A stretch of DNA of 64,000 bases from Fimbriosthenelais zetlandica (GCA_977030845.1 OZ365110.1:17732001-17796000), one strand, 5' to 3'; shown: positions 14,201-61,074, counted from the stretch's first letter. Notes: generated by a model not told the origin, from the letters alone. Translations and numbers: made by a program.

Positions 14201-17200
14201 CAGCAAAGAGAGAGACACACTGGCAGGCAGTATAAGTGTCAAGGTACCAACTGAATACAGTTTGACATTTGGCCACACTGGCAATTTAATCCGTAATGGA
14301 GATTCATCCAGTGATTTCCGCTTACTCCTGAATGGGCATATCACAACAGGAAACAGTCGCATCCATTACCGCGAAAATGCATTAACTATGACAACAAACC
14401 TTCAGTTACCAATTGAATCTTATAAGAAGTTTGGCTTAAGCATCAAGCACCGTGGCGTAGCATCTAATTTCAAGACAGAAGCAACATTAAATCTGCCATT
14501 TGCGAAAGTGAAAAAACTAGGATTTGAAGTGGAGCACTCTAGTTCCCTTCCTGAATTCAGCAGCCAGGCCAGAGTTATTTACAACAAAGCTGAATATGGA
14601 TTTAGTGTCAGTCATGAAGGTAACATCAATGATTTCACTTCCAAGGCAGGTATTGAGCACAAAGGTAAAAAAGTTCAGGCCGAAATCAAATGGACCCAAA
14701 CTGGCAGTGGTGGGAACATGAACCACAATGGCCATATCCGCCTTATGTCACCATACAAGCATCTACGGACTGTTGAGACCAAGTTCACCCACTCCATTCA
14801 GGGAACTTCATACAGGGGCCAGATTGAGTCTCTCTACAATGATGCCACCTACTTTGACACTGAATATACTTTTAGCAATGAGCAAAAGAAGGAACTTACA
14901 TTGACCATGAGAGAACCCAACCCTGCCTCTTTCAGTGGAAACTTTGAACTCACTCCCACGAGCCTCGAAACTGATGCTACTGTTAACTGGGACACAACTG
15001 ACCCGAACAGCAATGTCCAAATGGTTATGATGGCCAAGTCTGAACCTAAATATGAATTTGAAATCAAGGTCATCCGGCCCGAAAAGACAACCATGTTTAA
15101 AACAGATCTCGATTACGAAAACAAAAACTTTGACCATGGTGTGGCAGTACAGTGGGGTAATGGACCTGCAAAGAAGGCTGATTACCGAATGACTGGGGAG
15201 AAGTCTCGTGGTATATATAATGGTCAGTTTGAGCTGAGGTCACCCTACCAGAATCTGGAGGCCTCAGTGGAGCACACTGTTAAAGCTCAATCGGTGCAGA
15301 CTGTATTTGAGATTGGAAACATTGAAAAGCTCACTGTCATTCAGAAGATGTCCATGAAACAACCCAACTTCAGAAACTTTGATGCCATGCTCACTGTCAA
15401 GCACCCACGTCTGCAAAAGGTAAAAGATTTCAATCCTACTGGGTGATATACCTGTAACTCAAACTCAGTCCTACCCAGTAAAGCAATCAAAAAACTATAG
15501 AACTATTGTTTTTACCAATGACACCAATAACACTTGTCAACGGATAAAAGTAAAAGGTTTGTTTTCTTTCTAGGACATCAAGTTTGAAATGGAAGGTATC
15601 GTCAAGCCCCGACCTTATGCTGAAGGTCGTGTTAACATTGAATTTGGAAACGATAAAGTGACATTTACTGGCAAGGTTGGTGACATTTCCACCTCTGCCA
15701 AGACCTCCTACATCGCAGCCATGAGGCTCATCCACCCTGGAACTTTCACTGACTTCCAAGTAGGTCACATAAGAATATTTCCTTTCTTAATAGTCTTAAT
15801 AATCCAACGATAGATTGACTATATTTAACTCCGGTAGAATATGGTTAGGAGATAAAAAATGTGTCTTTTCCATTAGTTTGATTCAGAGTTTGGAGCAGAG
15901 AGAAATGAAGTCTTTGCTAACATGGAGGTGAAGCACAAGTCAGCTGTGGACAAGACAATCAAAACTGCTTCCCTCAGGTCCTCCATCAATACACTCCGTC
16001 GCAAGCTCAATCTTGATGTAAGTATTCAAGGAACCGCAATGCATGTTTTCCGTCTGTTATATATCACAAGTAAGATACAGTGGCTTACCATCCAAAGGAT
16101 TTTTGTTCATTGAAGTTGTCTTCAAAAAGTGCTGCCAAGCCTGGTATTTGTAAGAGACCTTCCTTCTTTGATTATGCAGGTAGTGTCACCTTTGCACGAT
16201 GACGTGCGTCTGACCGGTGCTATTGAAGGTGATTCTGGTGAATACAAAATGACCTTGGCAGGTGATGTTGGTGGAGAGCGTATCAGTGCAAATCTTGACC
16301 TGAGCAAGAAGGCCCCTCTTGCTGATCTCAGGATCAAATACCAGCGAGGTCAGTAGTCTTAACTCATCATGACCTTGGAGATCATTGTTGATTATAACTT
16401 GCTTCATTAATGATTATATTATATAAAATATGTATTTTTTCCAGACCGCCTAATGCGTATGTATGCCAAGTATATCTCAGTAAGCACAGTGCAGTTTGAG
16501 GCCTACAGACAGATAGGTAACAATAAAATCATTGATAGCCAGCTTGCCCTTCGCCTCAACAACAGCCGTCTTATCCATGGACGGGCTTACTTCAGACCAG
16601 AGTCTGCCTCAGAGATTCAGGTTAGTGTGGTTTACATTATTAAAGGTGACTCAGTCACTGTCAGTGACACGCATTGAGTGACACGCATTTAATCTCTGAG
16701 TGATTTGGGGGCATACAAATTTTCATTGCGTATGACTTTTAAAATTGTTTCTAACATAAACATCACTGTTCAGTAGGTGAGTTTATCCTCACACACCTTC
16801 TGTTTAATCTGTAGGAACTTTTGAACCAGAACCATGGAGTAGAAGCTTTCTTCCAACGTGTAAAGAATGCTATAGATGAAGACATTGAGCACAGAGAGCG
16901 TTACCTTAGGTCTCGCATTCAGCCTATCATCAGCTTCCTTCGTGATCTACTCCATCACCTCGATGACATTGAGCGTCGGGTTGAGCGGGCTTACAATGCG
17001 GCATACCGGAATGATCATTATTACATGAAAAGTAGCCATGAGATGGCCAAGAAACACTATAACCAAATCAGGTCTGTAATTTATACACTTGTACCATTAT
17101 TATCAAGCCTAATGATTAAGTTTGATGATTACATGATATCTGTCAGAATTTTATTTGGCAAAATCTGGTGAAGCAATGCTTACTGATTTTTCGATTTTCT

Positions 17201-20200
17201 GGCTGGCGGCCACTTAATCCTATTAGGATTTTTAACAGTGTATCTACATTACTTTGAATCAGACAATTTGATGTCTGACAGTTAAAAAACGTATAATACT
17301 CTGATGTTGAAATATTTATGGAAGAAATGGTACATCTGTCTTGCAGTGCATATACCCAGGAGCAGTATATGAAGTACAAGCCGGCGATGGACCGTCACTA
17401 TGAGAATATGGCTCAGAGTTGGGAAGACACCAAGCAGGCTGTCGCTATCAGACATGCTCATGTTACCAATACCGTTAATCAAATGCATGGTGAATTTATG
17501 GAGGATGTAAGGAGGACCTATAACGTGAGCTCTAATTTTTGTAATTTTCATTTAACTCTTGTGTCTTTTTACCACATTAGTCACAAGAAAAATTATTTAC
17601 CTTCTCACGCATTACAGTTAAGGGCATGCATCACTATGTTACATTTGCCCATACTGTTTGTTTTCAGGTTCTGAGTGAAAGAATTGAGGCCTTCATCACA
17701 GCACCCTGGTTCAGTATCATTGAGGAAAAACTCACAACACTGTATGAGAATGCCTACAACAGACTAAGAGGTAGAAAAATATAGAAAACATCCTAACATA
17801 TGTCTAGAACATCCCATCATTTGTTTACCATTCTGTCTCGTTTAATCCCGAATCAGTGCCGAATTGGAATACTGAACATCATTAGAATCTAAAATGTATA
17901 TATCTTTCAATAGAATCAGGTGAAAACTTCCGCAACCACCCCTATGTTCGTCCAGTAATTGAATGGTTCGACTCAGTCAAGGACAGCGAATACTTCCAAC
18001 CGCTCCGTGATTTCCATCGTGATGCCACTGAACACATGGCTAACCTTCGCAGGCGCTACAATAATGCCTATAGTACTGCCTACAGGAAGCTGTCAGAAAC
18101 TATGGACACCGAGGAGATGAGGAAGGTCCAGGAATGGGCACAGGATTTAGTTAGACATGTAAGTTTGCACCCATAAATTATTTAGCATCAATGTACTTGT
18201 ATATATTGTAACTGTGCATGATGATGACCTTGGGTTAATTGCGTTAAAAGAATACATGTATGTATTTATTTTTATAATTTTAATATTCCCTAGGGCAAAT
18301 ATGCTTATCAGTATTATGGACTCGCTGATATTGAGGAGACAATCCGTAATCTAAGGGCCTCCAACATAGATGAGCTGAAAACCAAGGCACTCCGTTATCT
18401 AAGGGATTACCTCCAACTCAACCGCACTAGGATCACTGTTTGGGACACCAACAGGGGTGACTATCAGGTAACTAAAAACCTGCACTCAGATTTAGTTGAA
18501 CACAGACCGCATATATATGTTAATAACATCAGTTTAAATAAACTATATAGCTGAGACAAGAATACCAAAAATCTTCCCCATTTGTGTTGTAGTTTGAGGC
18601 CTATATGCCCATCAAGCTCCAAAACCTGCGGGACTTCCCTGTGGAGGAGGTACGTCGTCTGGTGACCAAGACCAAGCGCAACCTGGCCTTCCTCATGCCT
18701 GATGAGGAATGGATACCATGGGATACAATCTACAAATACAAGATCTCCACTGATCCTCAAAGCTGGATCCCACCGTTTGATGGTAGGGATAATTAACTAC
18801 ATCAGCCATTCATTTGTAGTTTGTTTACATCTCATACTATGAATTTATGATGTTTCATATCCAACCCTCATTAAAATAAACTATTAAACTTTGATTCATA
18901 CATCATACATGCTATGTATTGAATATCAAATTTTGATTGTGGTGCCTAAATTTTTGCAGCCCACGCCACACTTGCTGGCAGCCAACACTTTATGACCTTT
19001 GACAAGAAGTTCTACGAATACTCTGGGGAGTGTAGCTATCTCTTGGCTCATGACTTCATCAACAGTAACTTCTCAGTGGTTGTTAACTATGATAGTGTTG
19101 ATGGAAAAATGTCCAAAAAATCCATCACTGTCCTCAGTAATGGCAAACAAGTGGAAATATTCTCCAGCTACAAGGTGACCTACATTTTGATTTTATCCTT
19201 TTATAAAATGCTTTAGTCTATTGGACGACTTAATGTTGTAGAAAGAAAGAAAGGTTTCACAATGCTGAAAATATGAATGTTTAACTGTGTCAATTGCTTG
19301 TTTAGGTGACTATAGATGGAGCTCGTAGTGAGCTTCCCATAGAATTTGATGACACCTCTGTGGTTCGTCTGGGCAACCGTATCCGACTTGACAACACCAA
19401 TGGTATCACTGTCACCTGTGATCTTCCTTATGACAGGTGTACTGTCAATGTGACAGGCTGGTAAGTGCAAAATGCTTTTGAATGTGCAGCTTAAGGTTTT
19501 CCTTATAATGCCTTTCATCAGAATAGATACTAATACCAGCTCTTACAAAAATTGCAATTAGTACCCGGAGATTAATACATGAAATTGTTGAAACAGGTAC
19601 TTTGCCAAGACTGCAGGCCTATTTGGAACATACAACAATGAACCTTTTGATGACTTCACAACACCACTGCATCGTCTGGCAACCAGCCCAGAAATTCTGG
19701 CTGACAGCTGGACTGTGGGAAGGAAGTGTCGTGTGCGTAACAATGCCGAGCAACGAGTCCTAGCCGACGCTAGGAGCTACAAGACATGTGCCAAATACTT
19801 CATGGTAATTATAGACAGCCATCACTTTCAAATGGTGCTTGTAACGGAATGTATTTGTTTCCTGTGCAGTTGATTAATATTTTACTTGGCTATGCGTTAA
19901 ACAACTGATTCTATCCATTTTAGGAAAGGCAATCACCATTCCGCCCCTGCTTCAGACAAGTTGACCACGAACCCTTCATGCAGATGTGCGTCAATGATCT
20001 TGCTAAGCGTGACAATCAACTTATCGGTGAATCCGACATCTGTGACGTTGCTGCTTTCTATGTAGATGAGTGTGCGCGTCATGGAGTTCCACTGCGACAA
20101 CCCAGAGCATGTGGTAAGGATTTAGTGATAGTACCATGTACCTAATCAGCTATACTTGCTTCTCTGTATGAAACCCAATTACATAAATTACATAAATTCT

Positions 20201-24580: not shown

Positions 24581-25426
24581 GCGCCAAATCTTTGCTGTTG
24601 CTAGAAATTTCCACGGATTCGTATTTTTATTCAGACAAATTCCGGTTAATTTACATATTCGATAATAATAATACGCATATATACAGAGAGTTTTAAAATT
24701 ACAGGATGGGACAGCTTTTATTTGAAAAAAATATTGTACATGGATTAACATTTTCGGACTCTTTATTACCAATACCGACGTTGTTTCAGGTGGGTTCATC
24801 TCGTAGGCCTACAATCATTCCGCACCTAATCATAATAATATACATACAATCGATAGTCCATCCTTCTTATCACAATAAAAGACATAAACGATGCATCATA
24901 GCACTAGGATATTACTATATTAAACCCAATTCATAGGAAAGATATTCCTCACCATACAGCTTCCCAGTAAGGTCATACTTAATGTTTCAATGTTAACAGC
25001 AACAACAGCAACGCCTGTTAATTCATCTACCAAATACACCATAGTCACACATAGAATACTATATCATCATAGTATTCTTCATATTTAAATTTATCCAACC
25101 ATGGAGGAGCTTTAACTTTATCTTAGCTTTAACTTAAAATTTTAGCTGATCGGTTTCATTCCATAAAGCCCCGGGTAGGGAATTCTAAATTCCTCGCCCC
25201 AGAGACCCTGGACTTTTAAAGTTTGACTTTTAAAAATTGATACAAGTCAAACATTGACGCCCATTGGCTCGTGAAGTGAGAGTTTACTTTTGAGTTTCAG
25301 TGTTTAACTTTAAGCTATTGTTCATTGTTCGGAATTTTTATGCAAATGCGTGATCATTTTTATAATTTGTAAGAAATAACATCTAAACCCATTGATCACC
25401 ATTTGACCGATATGACTTCTTTCCTT

Positions 25427-27729
25427 TTATGCTATGTAATAATAATGCTTTTGACAACTGCAATAATCGGGCACCTTTATATTCATAACAATTTGTTTCC
25501 TATAACTATTATACTTATGGTGCTTGCAATTGAATGTGACTGCTTTACAATGTGTGTTCTGGGCCTTGCAAATATAGTAGTAGCCATACTTTTTATCATT
25601 TCCTGGCTCAATTTTTGGTGGAGTGAAACATTTACCTTGGCAATCATCGACTTTACCAGCACAGCACATTCCACTGTATTGGGTGTAGACTATTCGAGAT
25701 GTCATCATGCATTGGCCAGTATGATATTCATTGCTGTATCCTCTGCTGAAAATCGCATTCATGATGCCAGAACTAGTTGGTCCTAACTTACTTTTACCTC
25801 CATAAGAATTGTCATGTCTCCTGCCAGGGGCCTCGTTATACACACTGAAGAAACTCATGCCATTTGTGTTGTAGCCATCCATATCTTGGATACTACCATG
25901 TCCTGTCCTGTCTCTTGTGTTGTAGCCTCCCATGTCATGCATATTGTAACCATTTTTGCTATTGGTTCCATAGCCTCCCGTATCATGTGTATTGTAACCA
26001 TTGGTTCCATAGCCTTCCATGGCATGTGCATTGTAACCATTTTTACTATTTGTTCCATAGCCTCCCATGTCATGTGTATTGTAACCATTGGTTCCATAGC
26101 CTCCCATATCGTGTGTATTGTAACCATTGGTTCCATAGCCTCCCATATCATGTGTATTGTAACCATTGGTTCCATAGCCTCCCATATCATGTGTATTGTA
26201 ACCATTGGTTCCATAGCCTCCCATATCATGTGTATTGTAACCATTGGTTCCATAGCCTCCCATATCATGTGTATTGTAACCATTGGTTCCATAGCCTCCC
26301 ATATCATGTGTATTGTAACCATTGGTTCCATAGCCTCCCATGTCATGTGTATTGTAACCATTGTTTCCATGGCCTAGCATGTCATGTGTACTGTAACCAT
26401 TTTTACTATTTGTTCCATAACCTCCCATGTCATGTGGAATGTAACCATTTGTTCCATAGCCTCCCATATCATGTGTACTGTAACCATTTTTACTATTTGT
26501 TCCATAACCTCCCATATCATGTGGAATGTAACCATTTGTTCCATAGCCTCCCATATCATGTGTACTGTAACCATTTTTACTATTTGTTCCATAACCTCCC
26601 ATATCATGTGGAATGTAACCATTTGTTCCATAGCCTCCCATATCATGTGTACTGTAACCATTTTTACTATTTGTTCCATAACCTCCCATATCATGTGGAA
26701 TGTAACCTTTTGTTCCATAGCCTTCCATGTCATGTGTACTGTAACCATTTTTACTATTTGTGCCATAGCCTCCCATATGTGGAATGTAACCATTTGTTCC
26801 ATAGCCTTCAATGTCATGTGTACTGTAACCAAATTTAGGCCTACTGTTTGTTCCATCGCCTCCCACGTTGTGTGTATTGTAACCATTTTTACCGTTGGTT
26901 CCTCCGTTGAGGCCTGCCCTCTTGTGTGTGCTGAACCCATCTTTGCCATGCATGCGGTCTATACGTTCTATTTTGTTACCTTTAGCTGGTTGCTTTGGAG
27001 TATAACTGTAACTTGGTGTTGTATAATCCTTTAATATAGGTCCCTGTGTGGTCTGAGTAATAATTTTGTGTTGATCTCTCAGTTTCTTAGTGTTAAACGG
27101 CTTTGATAGTGATACCTGGGCGGTCCTGTCCTGGGCATCTCCATAGAGTGAATTGTCATCATTGTAGGACTCATCATAACCTAAATGCAAGACACACAAA
27201 AACGCCTTTAAATCGAAATTTGAATAATCTTCTAATATGTCTTTTTTAATTCAAGAAGATGGCATTAAAATAGAACTGGACTTAAAGTTACTTTTCCCTT
27301 CATCAGTACAATTTGTAGGTTCGAGAATCTTTGCGTAATTCAAAGTTATCGTGTGTTATATTTAGAAATTCATTTTCCAAAATCTTACCACGTGAGAGCT
27401 CATAATAGTCAAAGCCACAAGGAGCCTCGTTGGGAATATCTGGAAAAATAAAGTGAAAAGCATAATCAGTTCCAAGCTTCCATATATAGACAGCTGTACC
27501 TATATATGATCCTTCCTTTGTCAATAAATTAAATATTAGGCATGGTATTTGTATTAGCACCGTAGGGAAAGACACACAGAAATTTGTTTAAAAACTTTAA
27601 ATGAATACTGGAAGAATAAGTGATTGAAGGATGTCACTTACCGTAACACTGAATTACACCCAAGTATTCGGTGAGAGCAGTGCTAAGTTGGGTCGCGAGC
27701 AGAAAAAATGAGAGAAATGAAATCTTCAT
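25427..27729 (-). CDS. Secreted Gly/Tyr/His/Asn-rich tandem-repeat protein with C-terminal cystine knot (paralog A, ~630 aa)
   Basis: Exons 27729-27642 (signal peptide MKISFLSFFLLATQLSTALTEY...), 27439-27389 and 27180-25427 (TAA); both introns phase 1 with GT-AG. Repeat NGYNTHDMGGYGT. C-terminal C-x14-CC-x6-CQGKC-x19-C-x6-C-x6-C-x21-CSC. Confidence 0.88.
25915..26890 (-). repeat. Coding tandem array: 39-bp units and 87-bp (48+39) higher-order units
   Basis: About 5 copies of the 29-aa dimer NSKNGYSTHDMGGYGT-NGYIPHDMGGYGT, then 8 identical 13-aa units NGYNTHDMGGYGT, then degenerate copies. Confidence 0.95.
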
Positions 27730-28558
27730 TATCGAATTGGGCTGATCTCTGTATAAGGTGAGAAATCCACATGGAGACTTTCTACGAGTAGATGGAGACT
27801 CAAAAGGAGTTTTTCATTTTATATGTCACAGAGAACAATGGAAATTAATTTTAAGGCAATGTTCCAAATATTTTCTCCATTTCATTATCTATAAATGCCC
27901 CTGTTACTTTATTTAAAAATACAACAATTACACTTGGCTCCATAATCAACAAAGAAATATAATGTACGTATGTATAATCATTTTAGTAATCACACCAGAT
28001 TTTATTGCATGCCATGTGCTTTTTCCGGTTTTAAATCAGCAACTGAATTATAGGCAGTTTTTATGTGCATCGAATGTTAAATTAATGGCAACTAATCCAA
28101 ACTAACGTTGTAATATGCACTGGTGGAATTCCACATCTCTTTTAAATTCCCTTTCATTGTTTGCTTTTTAGGGAATTCTCATGAAAATTATGGTTAATTG
28201 GATGATTATCCAATTTTCTACAGCCGCAAACATTAATGCTTGGCAGATGGAAAGAAAACTATTTGACATTTTTGTTAATTGGCAACATACAGACCTCATC
28301 AGTGAAAAAGCATAGGCATTTCTTCCCATGTTAATGCTCCGTTAATATTATTGCTCATATTAATTTTAAAAAAGTATAATATTATTATGTAAAAATTGTA
28401 TCAAGTAATTGTAATGTTTGGTATCACATGAATATGACTTTTTTCAAGGAATAGACAATGGTATATAAGGTGGGTGATTGACTTGTGGAGATTAGTTGGA
28501 TCAGAGCTCTAGTATAATCATAACATTTCCGCAGTGAAAGATTATTGGAAGTTTCACG
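27730..28558. promoter_or_regulatory. Bidirectional intergenic promoter region shared by the two cystine-knot paralogs
   Basis: 829 bp between the two divergent ATGs. TATAAAA on the minus strand at 27817-27823 and TATATAA on the plus strand at 28462-28468, each about 90 bp upstream of its ATG. Confidence 0.6.
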
Positions 28559-29766
28559 ATGTTGATCTTTGTGGTGATCACTTCGTTAACGGTTGCTGGC
28601 ATTCATGCAGAATACCCAGTTGATCGTACGCAAGACTGCGATGGTAAGATAAATACAGAATTACCTGTAATTTTTATAATTGAAATCTAGAAGTGTTGAT
28701 TTGTTAAATGCACATACTATGTTAACGCTGTAGTCGATTGCACCTTTGAGTTTCTCTGTATCCTTATTATCTCTTAGTTGAAGAGGTTATTTTGAGTGTC
28801 AAATATATTTAATTGAGAAATAATTTTAATGCAATCAACTATCACCCACAACATTAACCCGTCTGTTACAAGGTGACTCATACATATTATTTACTTTCAT
28901 CCTTCAGAAATTCCTTCGGACCCACCCTGTCGCCAGAGTCTGTTTCATACATGTAGGTCCTTTTTAAATTTATTGGATGACAAATATATTTATAAAAACG
29001 GTATCAAAACGTGTAATTATTTTTTAAACTTTGAATTTCTCTTTCATTGCATATATATTAAAAATTCATATGAACAGAACAAGATCCCCAATTCAATATT
29101 AAATATTATGCAATATTTATAATATTAGAATCTTGTCATTTCTATTTGAAATCCAGATGGACATCCATATTATGAATATAACTCTGGTTACAACTATTAC
29201 TCGTACAACTATCCCTTTGATCATGACCGCAATGGAGATGACAAAATAGACTACCGTGACCATCAGTATACAAGAGGTTATGTAAGCTATGGTAAGCGAG
29301 TAGACCATCCTTATTTCCAAGACCATAGATATGCATTTGGCTATGGACGCAACAACGGCTATTGTAGCCTGGGCAAACGGGTTGTGTACAGGCAACATAG
29401 AGGTATGTGCTGCACTGCATTGGTAGATGACTGCCAAGGTTACTGCTATGGAAAGGGCGAGTACCTCCAGAAGGATGGCGATGGTAAAACGTGTCAGGCT
29501 GCCTATAGAAACTGCCAGCATGTGAAGTTCTACTGCACCAGTTCCTATCGCCGCTCAGGGGATCGAGTTTATTCCATGTACCTCAATATACCAACTGAGT
29601 GTCAGTGTAGTTCGGGGACTGGTAAGCATTTTTGTGTGATTTCAATAGAAAAATAACATAATGTTAGAGATTAGATGTGTTTAGGCACACTGGTTAAATT
29701 TTGGTGAGAACCAATTTTATAAGGTTGAAATTGGGATTTCACATTTTGTTTTTTGCAGATGAATGA
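28559..29766 (+). CDS. Secreted Tyr/Gly/Asp-rich protein with C-terminal cystine knot (paralog B, ~200 aa)
   Basis: Exons 28559-28643 (signal peptide MLIFVVITSLTVAGIHA-EY...), 28908-28952, 29157-29621 and a probable last exon 29759-29766 (D-E-stop); unspliced read-through would end at 29656. Same intron phases as paralog A. C-x14-CC-x6-CQGYC-x15-C-x6-C-x6-C-x21-CQC. AATAAA near 29883. Confidence 0.85.
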
Positions 29767-30866
29767 AAGTGGCGTATATTCTGGTATCATCGACACATTT
29801 CTACAGCCGCCGCATATTGTATCAGACAGTGCACATTTGACTGACATTATCATATAATGCAATGCTCTTCATTAATGTGCATAATAAATATGTCTGGCTC
29901 ACGTTATATCATACTCTGCAAAAGACCAAATGCATCGCACTTCCACAACAGAAGCATGAACAAATTTAATTGAACTTTCCTTCAAAGATGGATGATTTAA
30001 GACGGGTAATTCGTTTTAAAACTGCAACAAAATGAGGGACAATCATATCGTTCTATTTCTCCTCTGTTTTCCTTTTCTTCAAATGGATTGTTTGGGACGG
30101 AAAACAAAAAATAAATATATCATAAATATTGAATAAAATTTAATGAATTAGGACTACACAATGTACACATTTAATTCAACGCCTATATCGTAACATTTCT
30201 CTTTGTTCTTTGCTGGGAAAAAGGACAATATACTGTACAACATTGGCATGCTATTATGAATGTATATGAGAACTACGGCTATATTCATATGACAAATAAA
30301 GGCACCTCTCACATTTAATTCAATTTCGATATGTCATTTGTCATCTATGCTTGTGTATCTCAAATGCCAAACCTCAGTATGTGAAAAAGGGCCTTGGTAC
30401 ACCAAGACCTTATTTTACATGCGGAAAATACTTTGACAAGGGAATGGCACATCAAAATAGTGATGATTGTAAGGAATTTCACTGTTTCCTATATTATTAT
30501 ATATATTAAAAAACACTTTTTCCATAATTTCAAGCTGGTAAGTAAGGCGTGCGATCAACCTGGCATAGTTTTCAGTCTTGTGACCTGTACATGTATGCTA
30601 GCCTGCAGTACAGGTGGGTGGGAGGTCAGGACCATCTTCCCCCTCTGACACTAGAACTCACCATCACTCCAGGTACCTCCTATACCCACATAATTGAACA
30701 TGTTAAATTGTATGATCACATAAAGGAATGACATTAAAGCAAGTATCTTACTAAAGTTTATCAGTAGCCAACACCCTTTTCTAGTAGAAATCACTAGCAT
30801 CATGTGTTCCTTTAATACCATAGTGTCCACATACTGTTTATCAGTTTACTTCTATATCCAGTCCTT

Positions 30867-58500: not shown

Positions 58501-61074
58501 TGAAATAAGGAAAAAATGCAATTTCATACAGTCTCAAGTTTGAAGAAATCTAGTTCATTTCTCATGATGTATCTTACAGGAGTGCTTGAGTGAGTGTAGG
58601 CAGTGCACAAAACCTTTGCACAGTCACTTGTGAAGCTCCATAACGATTCATATTATGAAACCCAACGCCTATAGTCAGTGCCCAGAAGGTGTACCGAATT
58701 TTTGGATCGGAATCAAAACTGAAAAAATAAGTATGCATGATTTCACTATAATTATTTTATTTGTATGGCTGGTTCATAATTAAATTTGAAGAGAAAATGT
58801 TCTTGCCAATATTTTTAAATCATTACGAATACTTATTTAGTAGAAACTTACTCGAAGAAATCTAGTCTATTCCACTTGCCACAGATCTCCCATACCTCAT
58901 CAATGCCATGAACTAGTTCAATAGACTGTAGAAGAATTATGAATAGTTCTTATGAGAATATAATTTCATATATATGTAATATGTTCACATCATTCTTTGT
59001 GTGACACGATATTTATCATTTATTCCATTTTTAATAATTACAAATAATTTATGTTTTATTAGATATAATTATATTTACCTTTAGTTAATCTTACTGCACT
59101 TACTTTTATGCATATTGCCAAGAGCGAAGCCAACATAATAAGAGCCTGTAAAACATCAGTCCATACGACCCCTCTGATTCCTCCCTATTGAGAAATTTAT
59201 TGCAAAAATGAATTGCAAATTATTATTCATATATATTATGTGGTTTACACTGTGGTTTCCATTGCAAATATTAAAATATTCTGTAGTGAAAAAAACAAAT
59301 AAAAATATAGCAATGTAAAAGTATACTCCACAGTGTTGTGAATGCATAACCCTAATTATTACGTCTTCTATATAATTATAGGCGAGAACCAGGGCAGAAC
59401 TTACAGTTATAGACATCATTTGTTACCCAACTGGTTAAGTTTGGGAAATCGCTCTAGTAGATTGTGACATTTGACTAACATATCTCTCAAGCAGTTTTAT
59501 GAGTTAAAACAATAACCTAATCTAACTTTATAGATAGGGCCTACAGTTAAGTGACAAATTGAGAAATGTCAGTTTAATTTACCTGGTAGGCCTAAGCCGA
59601 GTGACATGTATTTACCATGATAATATACATGTACTAAGACGATTTGTCTGTCAAAGATTAAATCTTCAACTAAATCATTTAAAATTACTTGCCTGCCTTA
59701 AATTATATTATAAGAAATTTACTTACAATGGATGTGTAAACAATGGTTATCAAAGTACCCACGACGATGGATACCGGTAGTGGGATGGGTGTTACTATAA
59801 TAGGGTACGAAAAAAAGACAATTAGAAGAATATAAATTGTGAAGAAACAATTAAACATCTTATATTTCAATTTATCTAATGAATGAGTTATTTTTTCAGT
59901 TAATTATATATATTCTAAAAGGAATTATCCTGTGTCTCGGAGTAATTAGATAATTTGATTAACAAATACAATTTCATTATTATACATACATGCAGCAAGC
60001 GTAATAGACATTCCAAAGAAGGAAATCGCTGCTTGTAGAATCTAATAAATATTTAAAAAAACGCATAATGACATTTGAATTGTAACACAATGTATGCTTT
60101 ATATTTGAAGATTTCTATGAGGAAGTTGGGGATATTTAATGGGGGAGATATATAATGTTGTAAGGGGCCCTGTACACTGACCCATAGTTCAGCAAGAGAA
60201 ACAAATCCTTGGGCACAAAATCGGATAAATTTAACTACTTAAATAAAGCATCAGATTCAGAACAGTGTTTTCCATACAGTGTATATTACAGTCTTCACCT
60301 AATTGGGGTGGTTATATAGGTCTTCCTCGGTTTAGACCATACTTATCCATGCATTTTTTTTAAAAAAGATATTAGTTTATAAAATAGTCTGTAATAATTC
60401 AAATGTTATACTTACTGCCACACTGACTTGAAGAAGTGTCCCAATGGCAACGACTAATCTCGAGTTAAATCTGTCCCATAGGTACTATAATATTAAATAT
60501 CATATGGATGGGTTGATTTACCTTAAGATCAGTGCATACATATAACAGTGGTAACATATAATTCACATTTTTTCAAGTTTTGAAAAGAGTCCAATGAATG
60601 TTTCCATTATCCTTGCCCCGCATATCTTCCTGGGTGTGGGGATATACATGTGGACTTTTATTTGCAGGAAGGGGTGACATTGAAATTATAGGCTACCTCC
60701 AACCAGGACTTAAATTTTATACCGTTGATACTCACATGGTTGAGGCTTGTAAGCTTGAGAGGGTAGAAGACTGGTATAAATATGATGGCTGCTAAAATGC
60801 CTCCTAAAACCACCCCAATGGTATAGAGCCAATAGGCTCCACCCCTCGTATAAACCTCAGCTGGGAAGCCCACGATGATGACCGAGGAATAGAGAGAGGC
60901 TGCCATGGAGAGCATGACAGGAAGAACGTGCAGCTTCCTGCTACCAACAAAGTATTCCTCCAGTGTCTCCCGTTTTCGACTAAAATAACCACCGAGCACA
61001 CCGAGGACAAATGTAATTCCAATTGTCAGGGCGAGGATGAGATAATCCGCCCAGTGTATTGTTGATGAAGCCAT
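55572..61074 (-). CDS. Sodium:solute symporter, SLC5A6/SLC5A8/SLC5A12/NIS subfamily-like (578 aa)
   Basis: 15 phase-consistent exons (minus strand): 61074-60736, 60484-60416, 60041-59990, 59794-59727, 59184-59104, 58925-58852, 58718-58578, 58419-58284, 57281-57196, 57018-56906, 56764-56607, 56520-56372, 56073-55967, 55841-55759, 55652-55572 (TAA). Motifs EEYFVGSRKL, GFPAEVYTRG, YLWDRF, GGIRGVVWTDVLQ, RYTFW, QVTVQRF, CDPLKSG, PGFPGLFLAG, STASSFINS, LYSISYLW. Confidence 0.95.
58105..58124. repeat. G20 homopolymer (intronic)
   Basis: Read directly; G-quadruplex-capable. Confidence 0.9.

What the first reader, a model, noticed from the sequence alone, without database searches (positions are those of the whole stretch)
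25427..29766. Head-to-head pair of paralogous secreted cystine-knot proteins fused to Gly/Tyr/His-rich domains: candidate undescribed heterodimeric biomaterial or hormone-like system
Seen: two divergently transcribed genes 829 bp apart, each with its own TATA box and signal peptide, identical intron positions and phases, a shared N-terminal C..IP..PC motif and the same 10-Cys C-terminal domain (CxGxC and CxC present). The middle is a ~300-aa GYH-rich repeat array in A and ~65 aa of Y/G/D/H-rich sequence in B. Known: CxGxC...CxC with C4-x13-C spacing defines the glycoprotein-hormone/bursicon/DAN/CTCK knots. These dimerise, and heterodimer subunit genes such as GPA2/GPB5 are often adjacent. A's CMMTSRIVYTQYSGMC...KVPDYCSC recalls bursicon CQVTPVIHVLQYPGC...KAPLECMC. 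Gly/His/Tyr-rich secreted proteins build invertebrate hard or adhesive materials (Nereis jaw Nvjp-1, squid-beak HBPs, DOPA cements). Inference: co-expressed A/B subunits dimerise through the knot and cross-link or coacervate through Tyr/His repeats (cuticle, jaw, cement, egg coat). I recall no described family with this fusion, but could not search.
Basis: partly seen in the sequence, partly recalled or inferred. Interest (0 to 1): 0.85.

Follow-up and report, generated by a model that had tools for sequence, protein, structure and literature searches.

The report
Orphan secreted cystine-knot-like gene pair
Two back-to-back genes of an invertebrate (probably a worm) encode related secreted proteins that join a tyrosine/glycine-rich, repeat-prone middle to a small ten-cysteine end piece that looks like a hormone-type cystine knot; nothing like them was found in any database, but there is no expression data and their job is still a guess.

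Summary
Gene A (minus strand, 3 exons, 630 aa) and gene B (plus strand, 3 or 4 exons, 200 aa) start 829 bp apart. Each has a TATA box about 90 nt upstream of its ATG, a signal peptide and GT-AG introns in phase 1. They share an N-terminal C-x8-C motif and a C-terminal 10-Cys domain (33% identity, E = 5e-15). Cys spacing is identical apart from one loop. A carries 22 near-identical 13/16-aa Gly/Tyr/Asn/Thr/His/Asp/Met units.

A cystine-knot fold is likely but not proven. CxGxC and CxC are present with knot-compatible spacing. B's low-confidence AF2 model (pLDDT 58) hits almost only sclerostin, vWF-CTCK, gremlin, VEGF and Norrin, weakly (Z ≤ 3.8). Language-model features of both point to DAN/CTCK/GPH. 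A's model failed, and no Pfam or PDB sequence match exists.

No homologue turned up among 1.84 billion representative proteins, in three word-indexed searches, in a metagenome scan or in the paper library. No sequencing run was listed, so expression, co-expression, heterodimer formation and the material role are all untested.

My best reading is a lineage-restricted structural or matrix protein pair whose knot domain dimerises. The main rival is a processed cystine-knot ligand. I class it as a new variant of a known kind, of moderate interest.

The parts
27642..27729 (-). Gene A exon 1: ATG, signal peptide (about 20 aa), EY, first N-terminal Cys; donor GTAAGT, phase 1
27389..27439 (-). Gene A exon 2: DIPNEAPC motif (second N-terminal Cys) plus a Tyr-rich stretch; phase 1 at both ends
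25427..27180 (-). Gene A exon 3 (stop included): linker, repeat array, 36-aa spacer containing PGRR, and the C-terminal 10-Cys domain
25931..26863 (-). Repeat array of gene A: 22 units of 13 aa (GGYGTNGY[NI][TP]HDM) or 16 aa (GGYGTNSKNGYSTHDM), with 39-nt and 87-nt periods
25430..25711 (-). Gene A C-terminal 10-Cys domain (94 aa), putative cystine knot: C-x14-CC-x6-CQGKC-x19-C-x6-C-x6-C-x21-CSC
27817..27823 (-). TATAAAA box of gene A, 88 nt upstream of its ATG
27730..28558 (.). 829-bp divergent intergenic region holding both putative promoters; the two halves show no detectable sequence similarity
28462..28469 (+). TATATAAG box of gene B, 90 nt upstream of its ATG
28559..28643 (+). Gene B exon 1: ATG, signal peptide (about 17 aa), EY, first N-terminal Cys; phase 1 donor
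28908..28952 (+). Gene B exon 2: EIPSDPPC motif (second N-terminal Cys)
29157..29621 (+). Gene B exon 3: 68-aa Tyr/Gly/Asp/His/Arg-rich middle with a YGKR site, then the 10-Cys domain
29363..29620 (+). Gene B C-terminal 10-Cys domain (86 aa in this exon): C-x14-CC-x6-CQGYC-x15-C-x6-C-x6-C-x21-CQC
29759..29766 (+). Putative 4th exon of B (completes the codon split by the intron, Asp, then Glu and the stop) after a 137-nt GT-AG intron. Unverified: without splicing, the ORF ends at 29659 after 12 more codons
29883..29888 (+). AATAAA signal 116 nt after B's spliced stop. A has only variant hexamers (TATAAA at +62, CATAAA at +84)

Best explanation
This is a lineage-restricted pair of divergently arranged paralogous genes for secreted three-part proteins. 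The parts are (i) a short N-terminal motif with two Cys (C-x8-C), (ii) an intrinsically disordered Tyr/Gly/Asn/Asp/His-rich middle, and (iii) a C-terminal domain of about 90 aa with 10 Cys.

In A the middle has been expanded recently into 22 near-identical 13/16-aa units. In B it is 68 aa long.

The C-terminal domain most likely folds as an eight-membered-ring cystine knot of the DAN/CTCK/glycoprotein-hormone type. Knot Cys I-VI would be Cys 1, 4, 5, 6, 9 and 10 of the domain. Two extra pairs (Cys 2, 3 and 7, 8) would staple finger 1 to finger 2.

Inferred mechanism: as in other proteins that carry a knot at the extreme C-terminus (mucins, vWF, Slit, CCN, arthropod clotting proteins), the knot acts as a stable dimerising cap. 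The Tyr/His/Asp/Met-rich chains supply the multivalent contacts (aromatic stacking, metal co-ordination, possibly Tyr oxidation). Together these would build an extracellular matrix, coat or adhesive.

Shown: gene structures, paralogy, secretory features, the repeat array, the Cys pattern, and the absence of detectable relatives.
Likely: the cystine-knot fold (about 0.7).
Inferred only: dimerisation, A/B pairing, and the structural role.
For: Gene models with canonical splice sites, shared phase-1 introns and signal peptides.

Paralogy of both the N-terminal motif (0 of 2000 shuffles reach its score) and the C-terminal domain (E = 5e-15). All 10 Cys, the Gly of CxGxC and the GMCC / VDDCQG blocks are invariant.

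Spacings fit a knot: I-II 23 aa, III-IV 15-19 aa, IV-V 35 aa.

B's model has a hairpin, a short heel and a long hairpin. In an unbiased search of 48,161 PDB representatives, only 29 reach Z >= 2. The top 7 (sclerostin, vWF CTCK, SOST, gremlin-1, PDGF-B, VEGF, Norrin) and 19 of the 28 listed are cystine-knot proteins. Foldseek on PDB, AFDB Swiss-Prot, AFDB clusters and the ESM Atlas gives the same picture.

Language-model features point the same way. A's domain scores 0.85-0.86 with DAN, GPH-beta, CTCK and partner-of-bursicon clusters. B scores 0.62-0.65 with the same set.

The Tyr/Gly/Asp/His-rich composition is kept in both paralogues even though their middles cannot be aligned, which suggests the composition itself matters. 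The near-perfect repeat units are typical of fast-evolving structural, adhesive or matrix genes. There are no dibasic sites between the units, so the array is not a multi-peptide precursor.
Against: - No expression evidence of any kind: no run was listed.
- The fold evidence is weak and not independent of the Cys pattern: pLDDT 57.6, Z at most 3.8, TM below 0.5, Atlas scores under 0.9. A's own model failed.
- No Pfam family at E up to 10 and no PDB sequence match.
- Each mature protein has an even number of Cys (12), so nothing requires an intermolecular disulfide.
- A is near neutral (net charge -3) with only 5% His. This is unlike the basic GY-rich worm cements (PMC12621633) and the His-rich jaw proteins (PMC13120676).
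- Both proteins have a Gly-dibasic site (PGRR in A, YGKR in B) 22-36 aa before the knot, which fits a processed ligand as well.
Confidence: 0.45

Rival explanations
1. A and B are precursors of cystine-knot signalling ligands (hormone, cytokine or BMP/Wnt-antagonist-like). The Tyr-rich N-terminal part would be a pro-region or matrix-tethering region, removed at the Gly-dibasic site upstream of the knot. The released knot domains of about 115-130 aa would act as homo- or heterodimers on a receptor.
For: - The knot-type domain sits at the C-terminus, as it does in TGF-beta, NGF, Spaetzle and PTTH precursors.
- Dibasic sites lie at comparable places: PGRR 36 aa before Cys 1 in A, and YGKR 22 aa before Cys 1 in B.
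- The nearest feature and fold neighbours are DAN, sclerostin, GPA2 and partner of bursicon.
- Gremlin and SOSD also have extended N-terminal regions before the knot (PMC4079206).
- The paired genes recall heterodimer subunit pairs.
Against: - A 311-aa array of near-identical repeats is an odd pro-region.
- The sites are not furin RxxR sites, and their distance to the knot is not conserved.
- Signalling knots are usually conserved across phyla, yet this domain has no detectable relative among 1.84 billion representatives.
- No Pfam match.
- Bursicon and GPH subunits have short N-termini (PMC4079206).
Confidence: 0.25
2. The C-terminal domain is not a cystine knot but a different, new disulfide-rich fold that carries CxGxC and CxC by chance. 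The proteins would then be lineage-specific secreted proteins of some other kind, such as immune, antimicrobial, venom or mucus components.
For: - Every fold score is below the usual significance levels.
- A's model gives unrelated hits.
- Sequence profiles find nothing.
- The extra Cys layout (CC before CxGxC, then C-x6-C-x6-C) matches no described family, and the CTCK pattern as I recall it is not met.
Against: - Five different structure libraries return almost only cystine-knot proteins for B's model, including a search that does not rely on Foldseek.
- The spacings of all six putative knot Cys are in the canonical ranges.
- The Gly of CxGxC is invariant between paralogues that share only 33% identity.
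Confidence: 0.2
3. One or both genes are not expressed: recent pseudogenes, or ORFs kept open by repeat structure alone.
For: There is no transcript evidence, no AATAAA after A's stop within 426 nt, and the repeat region is open in several frames.
Against: - A 630-aa spliced ORF in DNA of about 37% GC, and two paralogues that both keep the signal peptide, splice sites, all 12 Cys and a TATA box despite roughly 67% divergence. These indicate long-term purifying selection on both.
- The coding frame of the repeats is the one that continues into the conserved domain.
Confidence: 0.07

Closest known systems
DAN / sclerostin / gremlin / NBL1 BMP-Wnt antagonists and Norrin (eight-membered-ring cystine-knot proteins)
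   Same: Secreted. They have CxGxC and a terminal CxC, a first Cys about 14 residues before the next one, and at least one extra disulfide that can tie finger 1 to finger 2. Gremlin and SOSD also have an extended N-terminal region (PMC4079206). They are the top structural and feature neighbours.
   Different: No profile match. Here a CC doublet precedes CxGxC, and C-x6-C-x6-C follows knot Cys IV. There are 10 Cys in the domain, a long low-complexity repeat region precedes it, and no relatives exist outside this genome as far as could be searched.
C-terminal cystine-knot (CTCK) domains of mucins, von Willebrand factor, Slit, CCN proteins and the shrimp clottable protein
   Same: A knot domain at the extreme C-terminus of an extended extracellular protein, where it dimerises the chains. 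vWF CTCK is the second-best structural hit (Z 3.6), and Slit, CCN and the clottable protein appear. This is the closest analogy for how A may work.
   Different: The CTCK pattern (CC-x13-C ... CxC-x2-4-C, recalled from memory) is not met. There is no Pfam Cys_knot hit and no vWD, TIL, LRR or other accompanying domain. The chain is Tyr/Gly-rich rather than Ser/Thr/Pro-rich and has no N-glycosylation sequon.
Bursicon / partner of bursicon and GPA2/GPB5 heterodimeric hormones
   Same: Two paralogous cystine-knot subunits that could pair. Partner of bursicon and GPA2 clusters appear among the nearest feature and shape neighbours.
   Different: These hormones have short N-termini and are conserved across Bilateria (PMC4079206). 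Here 95-516 residues precede the knot and the domain is an orphan.
Gly/Tyr-rich cement proteins of sabellariid tube worms (Pc-1/Pc-2, Sa-1/Sa-2)
   Same: Secreted annelid proteins built of short Gly/Tyr-rich tandem repeats (PMC12621633). GGYG-type units are present.
   Different: Those proteins are basic, and the paper makes no mention of cysteine or of a knot. A is near neutral (net -3) and rich in Asn, Thr, Asp and Met. No sequence homology was found.
His-rich annelid jaw proteins (Nvjp-1, Nai11527)
   Same: Secreted, Gly-rich, disordered, containing His; proposed metal cross-linking.
   Different: The jaw protein Nai11527 has 29% Gly and 16% His (PMC13120676). A has 18% Gly and 5.4% His overall (26% and 7% within the repeats), plus 11% Tyr and a Cys-rich domain. 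No homology was found.

Membership tests
Cystine-knot growth-factor superfamily (fold level) | Six knot cysteines, with C-x-G-x-C (II, III) and C-x-C (V, VI) forming the ring, and a conserved Gly | tested here: met
   Each protein has one CxGxC and one terminal CxC. The Gly and all Cys are invariant between A and B. The defining features follow PMC4079206.
Cystine-knot growth-factor superfamily (fold level) | Spacing that allows finger 1 (I to II), heel (III to IV) and finger 2 (IV to V) | tested here: met
   I-II is 23 residues, III-IV is 19 (A) or 15 (B), and IV-V is 35. My generic pattern C-x18-30-CxGxC-x12-30-C-x25-45-CxC matches once in each protein.
Cystine-knot growth-factor superfamily (fold level) | Three-dimensional fold: two long beta-hairpin fingers around a knotted core | tested here: inconclusive
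   B's model has the right topology and retrieves almost only cystine-knot proteins. However, pLDDT is 57.6, Z is at most 3.8 and TM is below 0.5. A's model (pLDDT 48.5) gives unrelated hits.
Cystine-knot growth-factor superfamily (fold level) | Disulfide connectivity I-IV threading the II-V / III-VI ring | not testable with these tools
Curated families Cys_knot, DAN, Hormone_6, Sclerostin, Noggin, Spaetzle, NGF, PDGF, TGF_beta, IL17 (Pfam) | Match to the family profile at or near the gathering score | tested here: not met
   hmmscan of both C-domains and of A's exon 3 gave zero families at E up to 10. The PDB profile search also gave zero.
CTCK domain | CC-x13-C-x2-[GN]-x12-C-x-C-x2-4-C signature (PROSITE pattern as I recall it) | tested here: not met
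   The regex finds no match in A or B. The only CC lies before CxGxC and is followed by x6-C.
Bursicon / GPA2-GPB5 type heterodimeric hormones | Short N-terminus between the signal peptide and the knot; conservation across bilaterians | tested here: not met
   516 (A) and 95 (B) residues precede the knot. No relative was found among 1.84 billion representatives. The feature is taken from PMC4079206.
Bursicon / GPA2-GPB5 type heterodimeric hormones | The two subunits form a heterodimer that activates an LGR receptor | not testable with these tools
   No multimer prediction, expression data or binding data are available.
His-rich annelid jaw proteins (Nvjp-1 type) | Very high Gly and His content (29% and 16% in Nai11527) and homology to Nvjp-1 | tested here: not met
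   A has 18.3% Gly and 5.4% His; B has 9% Gly and 4.5% His. No homologue at E <= 0.01 among 8000 word-sharing candidates. Reference: PMC13120676.
Sabellariid GY-rich cement proteins | Basic proteins made of Gly/Tyr-rich repeats, expressed in cement glands, with Tyr converted to DOPA | tested here: inconclusive
   Gly/Tyr-rich repeats are present, but the net charge is -3 and no homology was found. Gland expression and DOPA are not testable here. Reference: PMC12621633.

The most novel reading that the evidence does not exclude
A and B are the two subunits of a new class of structural building block in which a hormone-type cystine knot has been co-opted as the (hetero)dimerising cap of Tyr/His/Asp/Met-rich chains. 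Those chains would harden by metal co-ordination or Tyr/DOPA cross-linking. The long-armed A and the short-armed B, made from one divergent promoter region, would set the chain length or the valency of a worm's cuticular, jaw, chaetal, tube or egg-coat material.
Probability: 0.15. Interest if true: 0.7.

Novelty: new variant of a known kind. Interest (0 to 1): 0.45.

Why it matters
If the fold and the structural role are confirmed, this would be a cystine-knot domain with a previously unlisted cysteine layout. It would be attached to a cross-linkable Tyr/Gly-rich repeat polymer and restricted to one lineage. That would show that the knot module, best known from hormones and morphogen antagonists, was recruited independently as a dimerising end-cap for a biomaterial. 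It would also give materials scientists a compact, genetically encoded 'sticky arm plus stable dimer node' design.

If the rival reading holds instead, these would be orphan cystine-knot ligands with unusual pro-regions. Either way, the pair gives an example of how quickly secreted Cys-rich and low-complexity genes drift beyond sequence recognition.

Tried and rejected
**Homologue searches, all blank**
- Word-indexed search with B's C-domain, B's exon 3 and A's exon 3.
- HMMER profile of the two C-domains against 1.84 billion representatives.
- PDB sequence search.
- Pfam at E up to 10.
- Metagenome contig scan: 83 pattern matches, none confirmed.
- Exact look-up of A's long ORF and of a neighbouring ORF.
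- Earlier-findings look-ups by sequence and by words.
- Text search of the paper library for four peptide motifs.

**Expression.** Two searches for sequencing runs listed nothing, so read laying could not be used.

**Structure.** A's C-domain model was too poor (pLDDT 48.5). Its Foldseek hits (phage coat proteins, DcpS) are meaningless.

**Promoters.** The two upstream halves of the intergenic region show no similarity beyond shuffles and no meaningful inverted repeat. The duplication is therefore old, and there is no evidence for a shared palindromic control element.

**Readings considered and rejected**
- The repeat array as a multi-copy peptide or antimicrobial precursor: there are no dibasic sites between the units.
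- A further paralogue in the window: tblastn finds only A and B.
- A Nereis-type His-rich jaw protein: the composition does not fit.
- Coding in another frame or strand of the repeat: only the minus-strand frame joins the signal-peptide exons to the conserved domain.

**Organism.** I could not identify it myself. The Atlas search with a neighbouring gene was uninformative. 'Probably annelid' rests on other agents' notes only.


Full report
**What is there**

Reading window 25000-30200 and assembling exons gives two divergent genes.

- Gene A is on the minus strand: exons 27729-27642, 27439-27389 and 27180-25427, 630 aa.
- Gene B is on the plus strand: exons 28559-28643, 28908-28952 and 29157-29621, 200 aa once a putative 8-nt fourth exon (29759-29766) is included.
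- All introns are GT-AG and 137-264 nt long. The first two introns of each gene are in phase 1.
- The ATGs are 829 bp apart. A has TATAAAA 88 nt upstream of its ATG, and B has TATATAAG 90 nt upstream.
- B has AATAAA 116 nt after its spliced stop. A has only variant hexamers.
- Both proteins begin with a hydrophobic signal-like segment followed by EY.
- tblastn of both proteins on the whole window finds no third copy.

**Paralogy**

The C-terminal domains align at 33% identity with E = 5e-15. All ten Cys, the Gly of CxGxC and the GMCC and VDDCQG blocks are invariant.

The Cys spacings are [14,0,6,3,19,6,6,21,1] in A and [14,0,6,3,15,6,6,21,1] in B.

The N-terminal motif (C, one residue, D/E, IP, three residues, PC) is also significantly similar: score 55 against 25.7 +/- 5.1 for shuffles, with 0 of 2000 reaching it. 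Intron 1 splits the same codon in both genes. Intron 2 has the same phase, but its position is equivalent only to within about two codons.

The two upstream regions share no detectable similarity. This is therefore an old whole-gene inverted duplication in which both copies have stayed intact.

**The middle regions**

A has 22 tandem units at 25931-26863. The units are 13 aa (GGYGTNGY[N/I][T/P]HDM) or 16 aa (with an SKN insert). They are organised as an 87-nt higher-order repeat followed by a run of 39-nt units. Mean nucleotide identity is 0.92, and five units in a row are identical.

The repeat region is 26% Gly, 13% Tyr, 13% Asn, 11% Thr, and 7% each of His, Asp and Met. B's 68-aa middle cannot be aligned to A's but has a similar composition: 23.5% Tyr, 12% Gly, 12% Asp, 7% His.

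Neither protein has an N-glycosylation sequon. A's net charge is -3. No dibasic sites lie between the repeat units. Each protein does have a Gly-dibasic site before the knot domain: PGRR 36 aa before it in A, and YGKR 22 aa before it in B.

**Is the C-terminal domain a cystine knot?**

The signature is present: one CxGxC, one terminal CxC, and I-II, III-IV and IV-V distances of 23, 15-19 and 35 residues. These agree with the superfamily definition of six invariant knot Cys plus a conserved Gly, with the other Cys variable (PMC4079206).

Sequence profiles see nothing. Pfam returns no family at E up to 10, and the PDB sequence search returns no hit.

AF2 on B's domain, with only the two-sequence alignment, gives a low-confidence model: pLDDT 57.6, pTM 0.45. 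It has a hairpin, a short heel and a long hairpin. That model retrieves almost exclusively cystine-knot proteins in every library:

| Library | Main hits |
|---|---|
| PDB (Foldseek) | IL-17A, sclerostin, PlGF/VEGF, noggin |
| AFDB Swiss-Prot | SOSTDC1, Slit, CCN, sclerostin, noggin, clottable protein, bursicon |
| ESM Atlas | VEGF-C/D, partner of bursicon, GPA2, Spaetzle-type |
| AFDB clusters | same families |
| 48,161 PDB representatives (no Foldseek) | see below |

In the search that does not depend on Foldseek, only 29 chains reach Z >= 2. The top seven (sclerostin, vWF CTCK, SOST, gremlin-1, PDGF-B, VEGF, Norrin) and 19 of the 28 listed belong to the superfamily.

Every individual score is nevertheless weak: E 0.02-0.5, TM below 0.5, Z at most 3.8.

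Language-model features agree. A's domain scores 0.85-0.86 with DAN, GPH-beta, CTCK and partner-of-bursicon clusters, sharing 158-166 features, just under the tool's own confidence marks. B scores 0.62-0.65 with the same set.

A's own AF2 model (pLDDT 48.5) was useless.

I put the cystine-knot fold at about 0.7. These lines of evidence all partly lean on the same Cys motifs.

**Not a member of any described family**

The CC doublet lies before the CxGxC instead of after the heel, and Cys IV is followed by C-x6-C-x6-C. The CTCK signature as I recall it is not met. Bursicon and GPH subunits have short N-termini and are conserved across bilaterians (PMC4079206), whereas 95-516 residues precede the knot here.

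**Relatives**

None was found:

- a HMMER profile search of 1.84 billion representatives
- three word-indexed searches of 5.8 billion clusters
- a metagenome scan
- exact look-ups
- motif searches in the paper library

This genome's own proteins do not seem to be in those collections. Close relatives of the species may therefore be missing too, and 'orphan' means orphan as far as these collections reach.

**Function**

No sequencing run was listed. Expression, co-expression and the splice junctions are therefore untested.

By analogy with proteins that carry a knot at the extreme C-terminus (mucins, vWF, Slit, CCN, clotting proteins), and with Gly/Tyr-rich annelid secretions (PMC12621633), the most economical reading is a secreted matrix, coat or adhesive component. 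The knot would dimerise the chains, and the Tyr/His/Asp/Met-rich arms would make multivalent, possibly metal- or oxidation-dependent contacts.

The composition does not match His-rich jaw proteins (29% Gly and 16% His; PMC13120676) or basic cement proteins.

The main rival is a processed cystine-knot ligand with a Tyr-rich pro-region, supported by the Gly-dibasic sites. A heterodimer of A and B is possible but has no direct support. Each mature chain has an even number of Cys (12).

**Context**

Other agents' notes on this genome call it probably annelid, though some say mollusc. I did not test this. The neighbouring genes give no functional hint: a vitellogenin/large-lipid-transfer-type gene lies upstream and a sodium:solute symporter lies far downstream.

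**Verdict**

This is a real-looking, intact and apparently lineage-restricted gene pair with a probable, atypical cystine-knot domain fused to Tyr/Gly-rich low-complexity sequence. I class it as a new variant of a known kind, of moderate interest, with function unproven.

Noticed in passing
window 7520-17700 (+ strand): A large multi-exon gene of the vitellogenin / large lipid transfer protein type. One exon matches Pfam Vit_open_b-sht (E = 1.3e-19). It also has a single 1343-aa exon (11415-15446) with no Pfam family. That exon's language-model features resemble clusters carrying PF21013 (score 0.90).
   Followed up: partly
window 25600-25720 and 29230-29300: Both proteins have a Gly-dibasic site shortly before the knot domain (PGRR in A, YGKR in B). 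B has a second GKR inside finger 1 that A lacks. These are possible convertase or amidation sites, or they may be chance.
   Followed up: partly
window 26880-27040 (minus strand; A residues about 95-115): The linker of A contains TPSYSYTPKQPAK, which recalls the Pro/Tyr/Lys decapeptides of mussel foot protein 1. This is a resemblance from memory and was not tested.
   Followed up: no
window 60658-61074 (- strand): An ORF that looks like the first coding exon of a sodium:solute symporter (Pfam SSF, E = 3.8e-07).
   Followed up: no
window 25800-27050, both strands: The repeat array keeps ORFs of 170-320 aa open in several other frames on both strands (for example 25864-26838 on the plus strand, Cys/His-rich). 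These are by-products of the stop-free repeat unit and should not be called as genes.
   Followed up: yes
window 29622-29766: B's stop depends on an unverified 137-nt intron. If the intron is retained, the protein ends 12 residues later and gains a 13th, unpaired Cys, which could matter for covalent dimerisation.
   Followed up: partly
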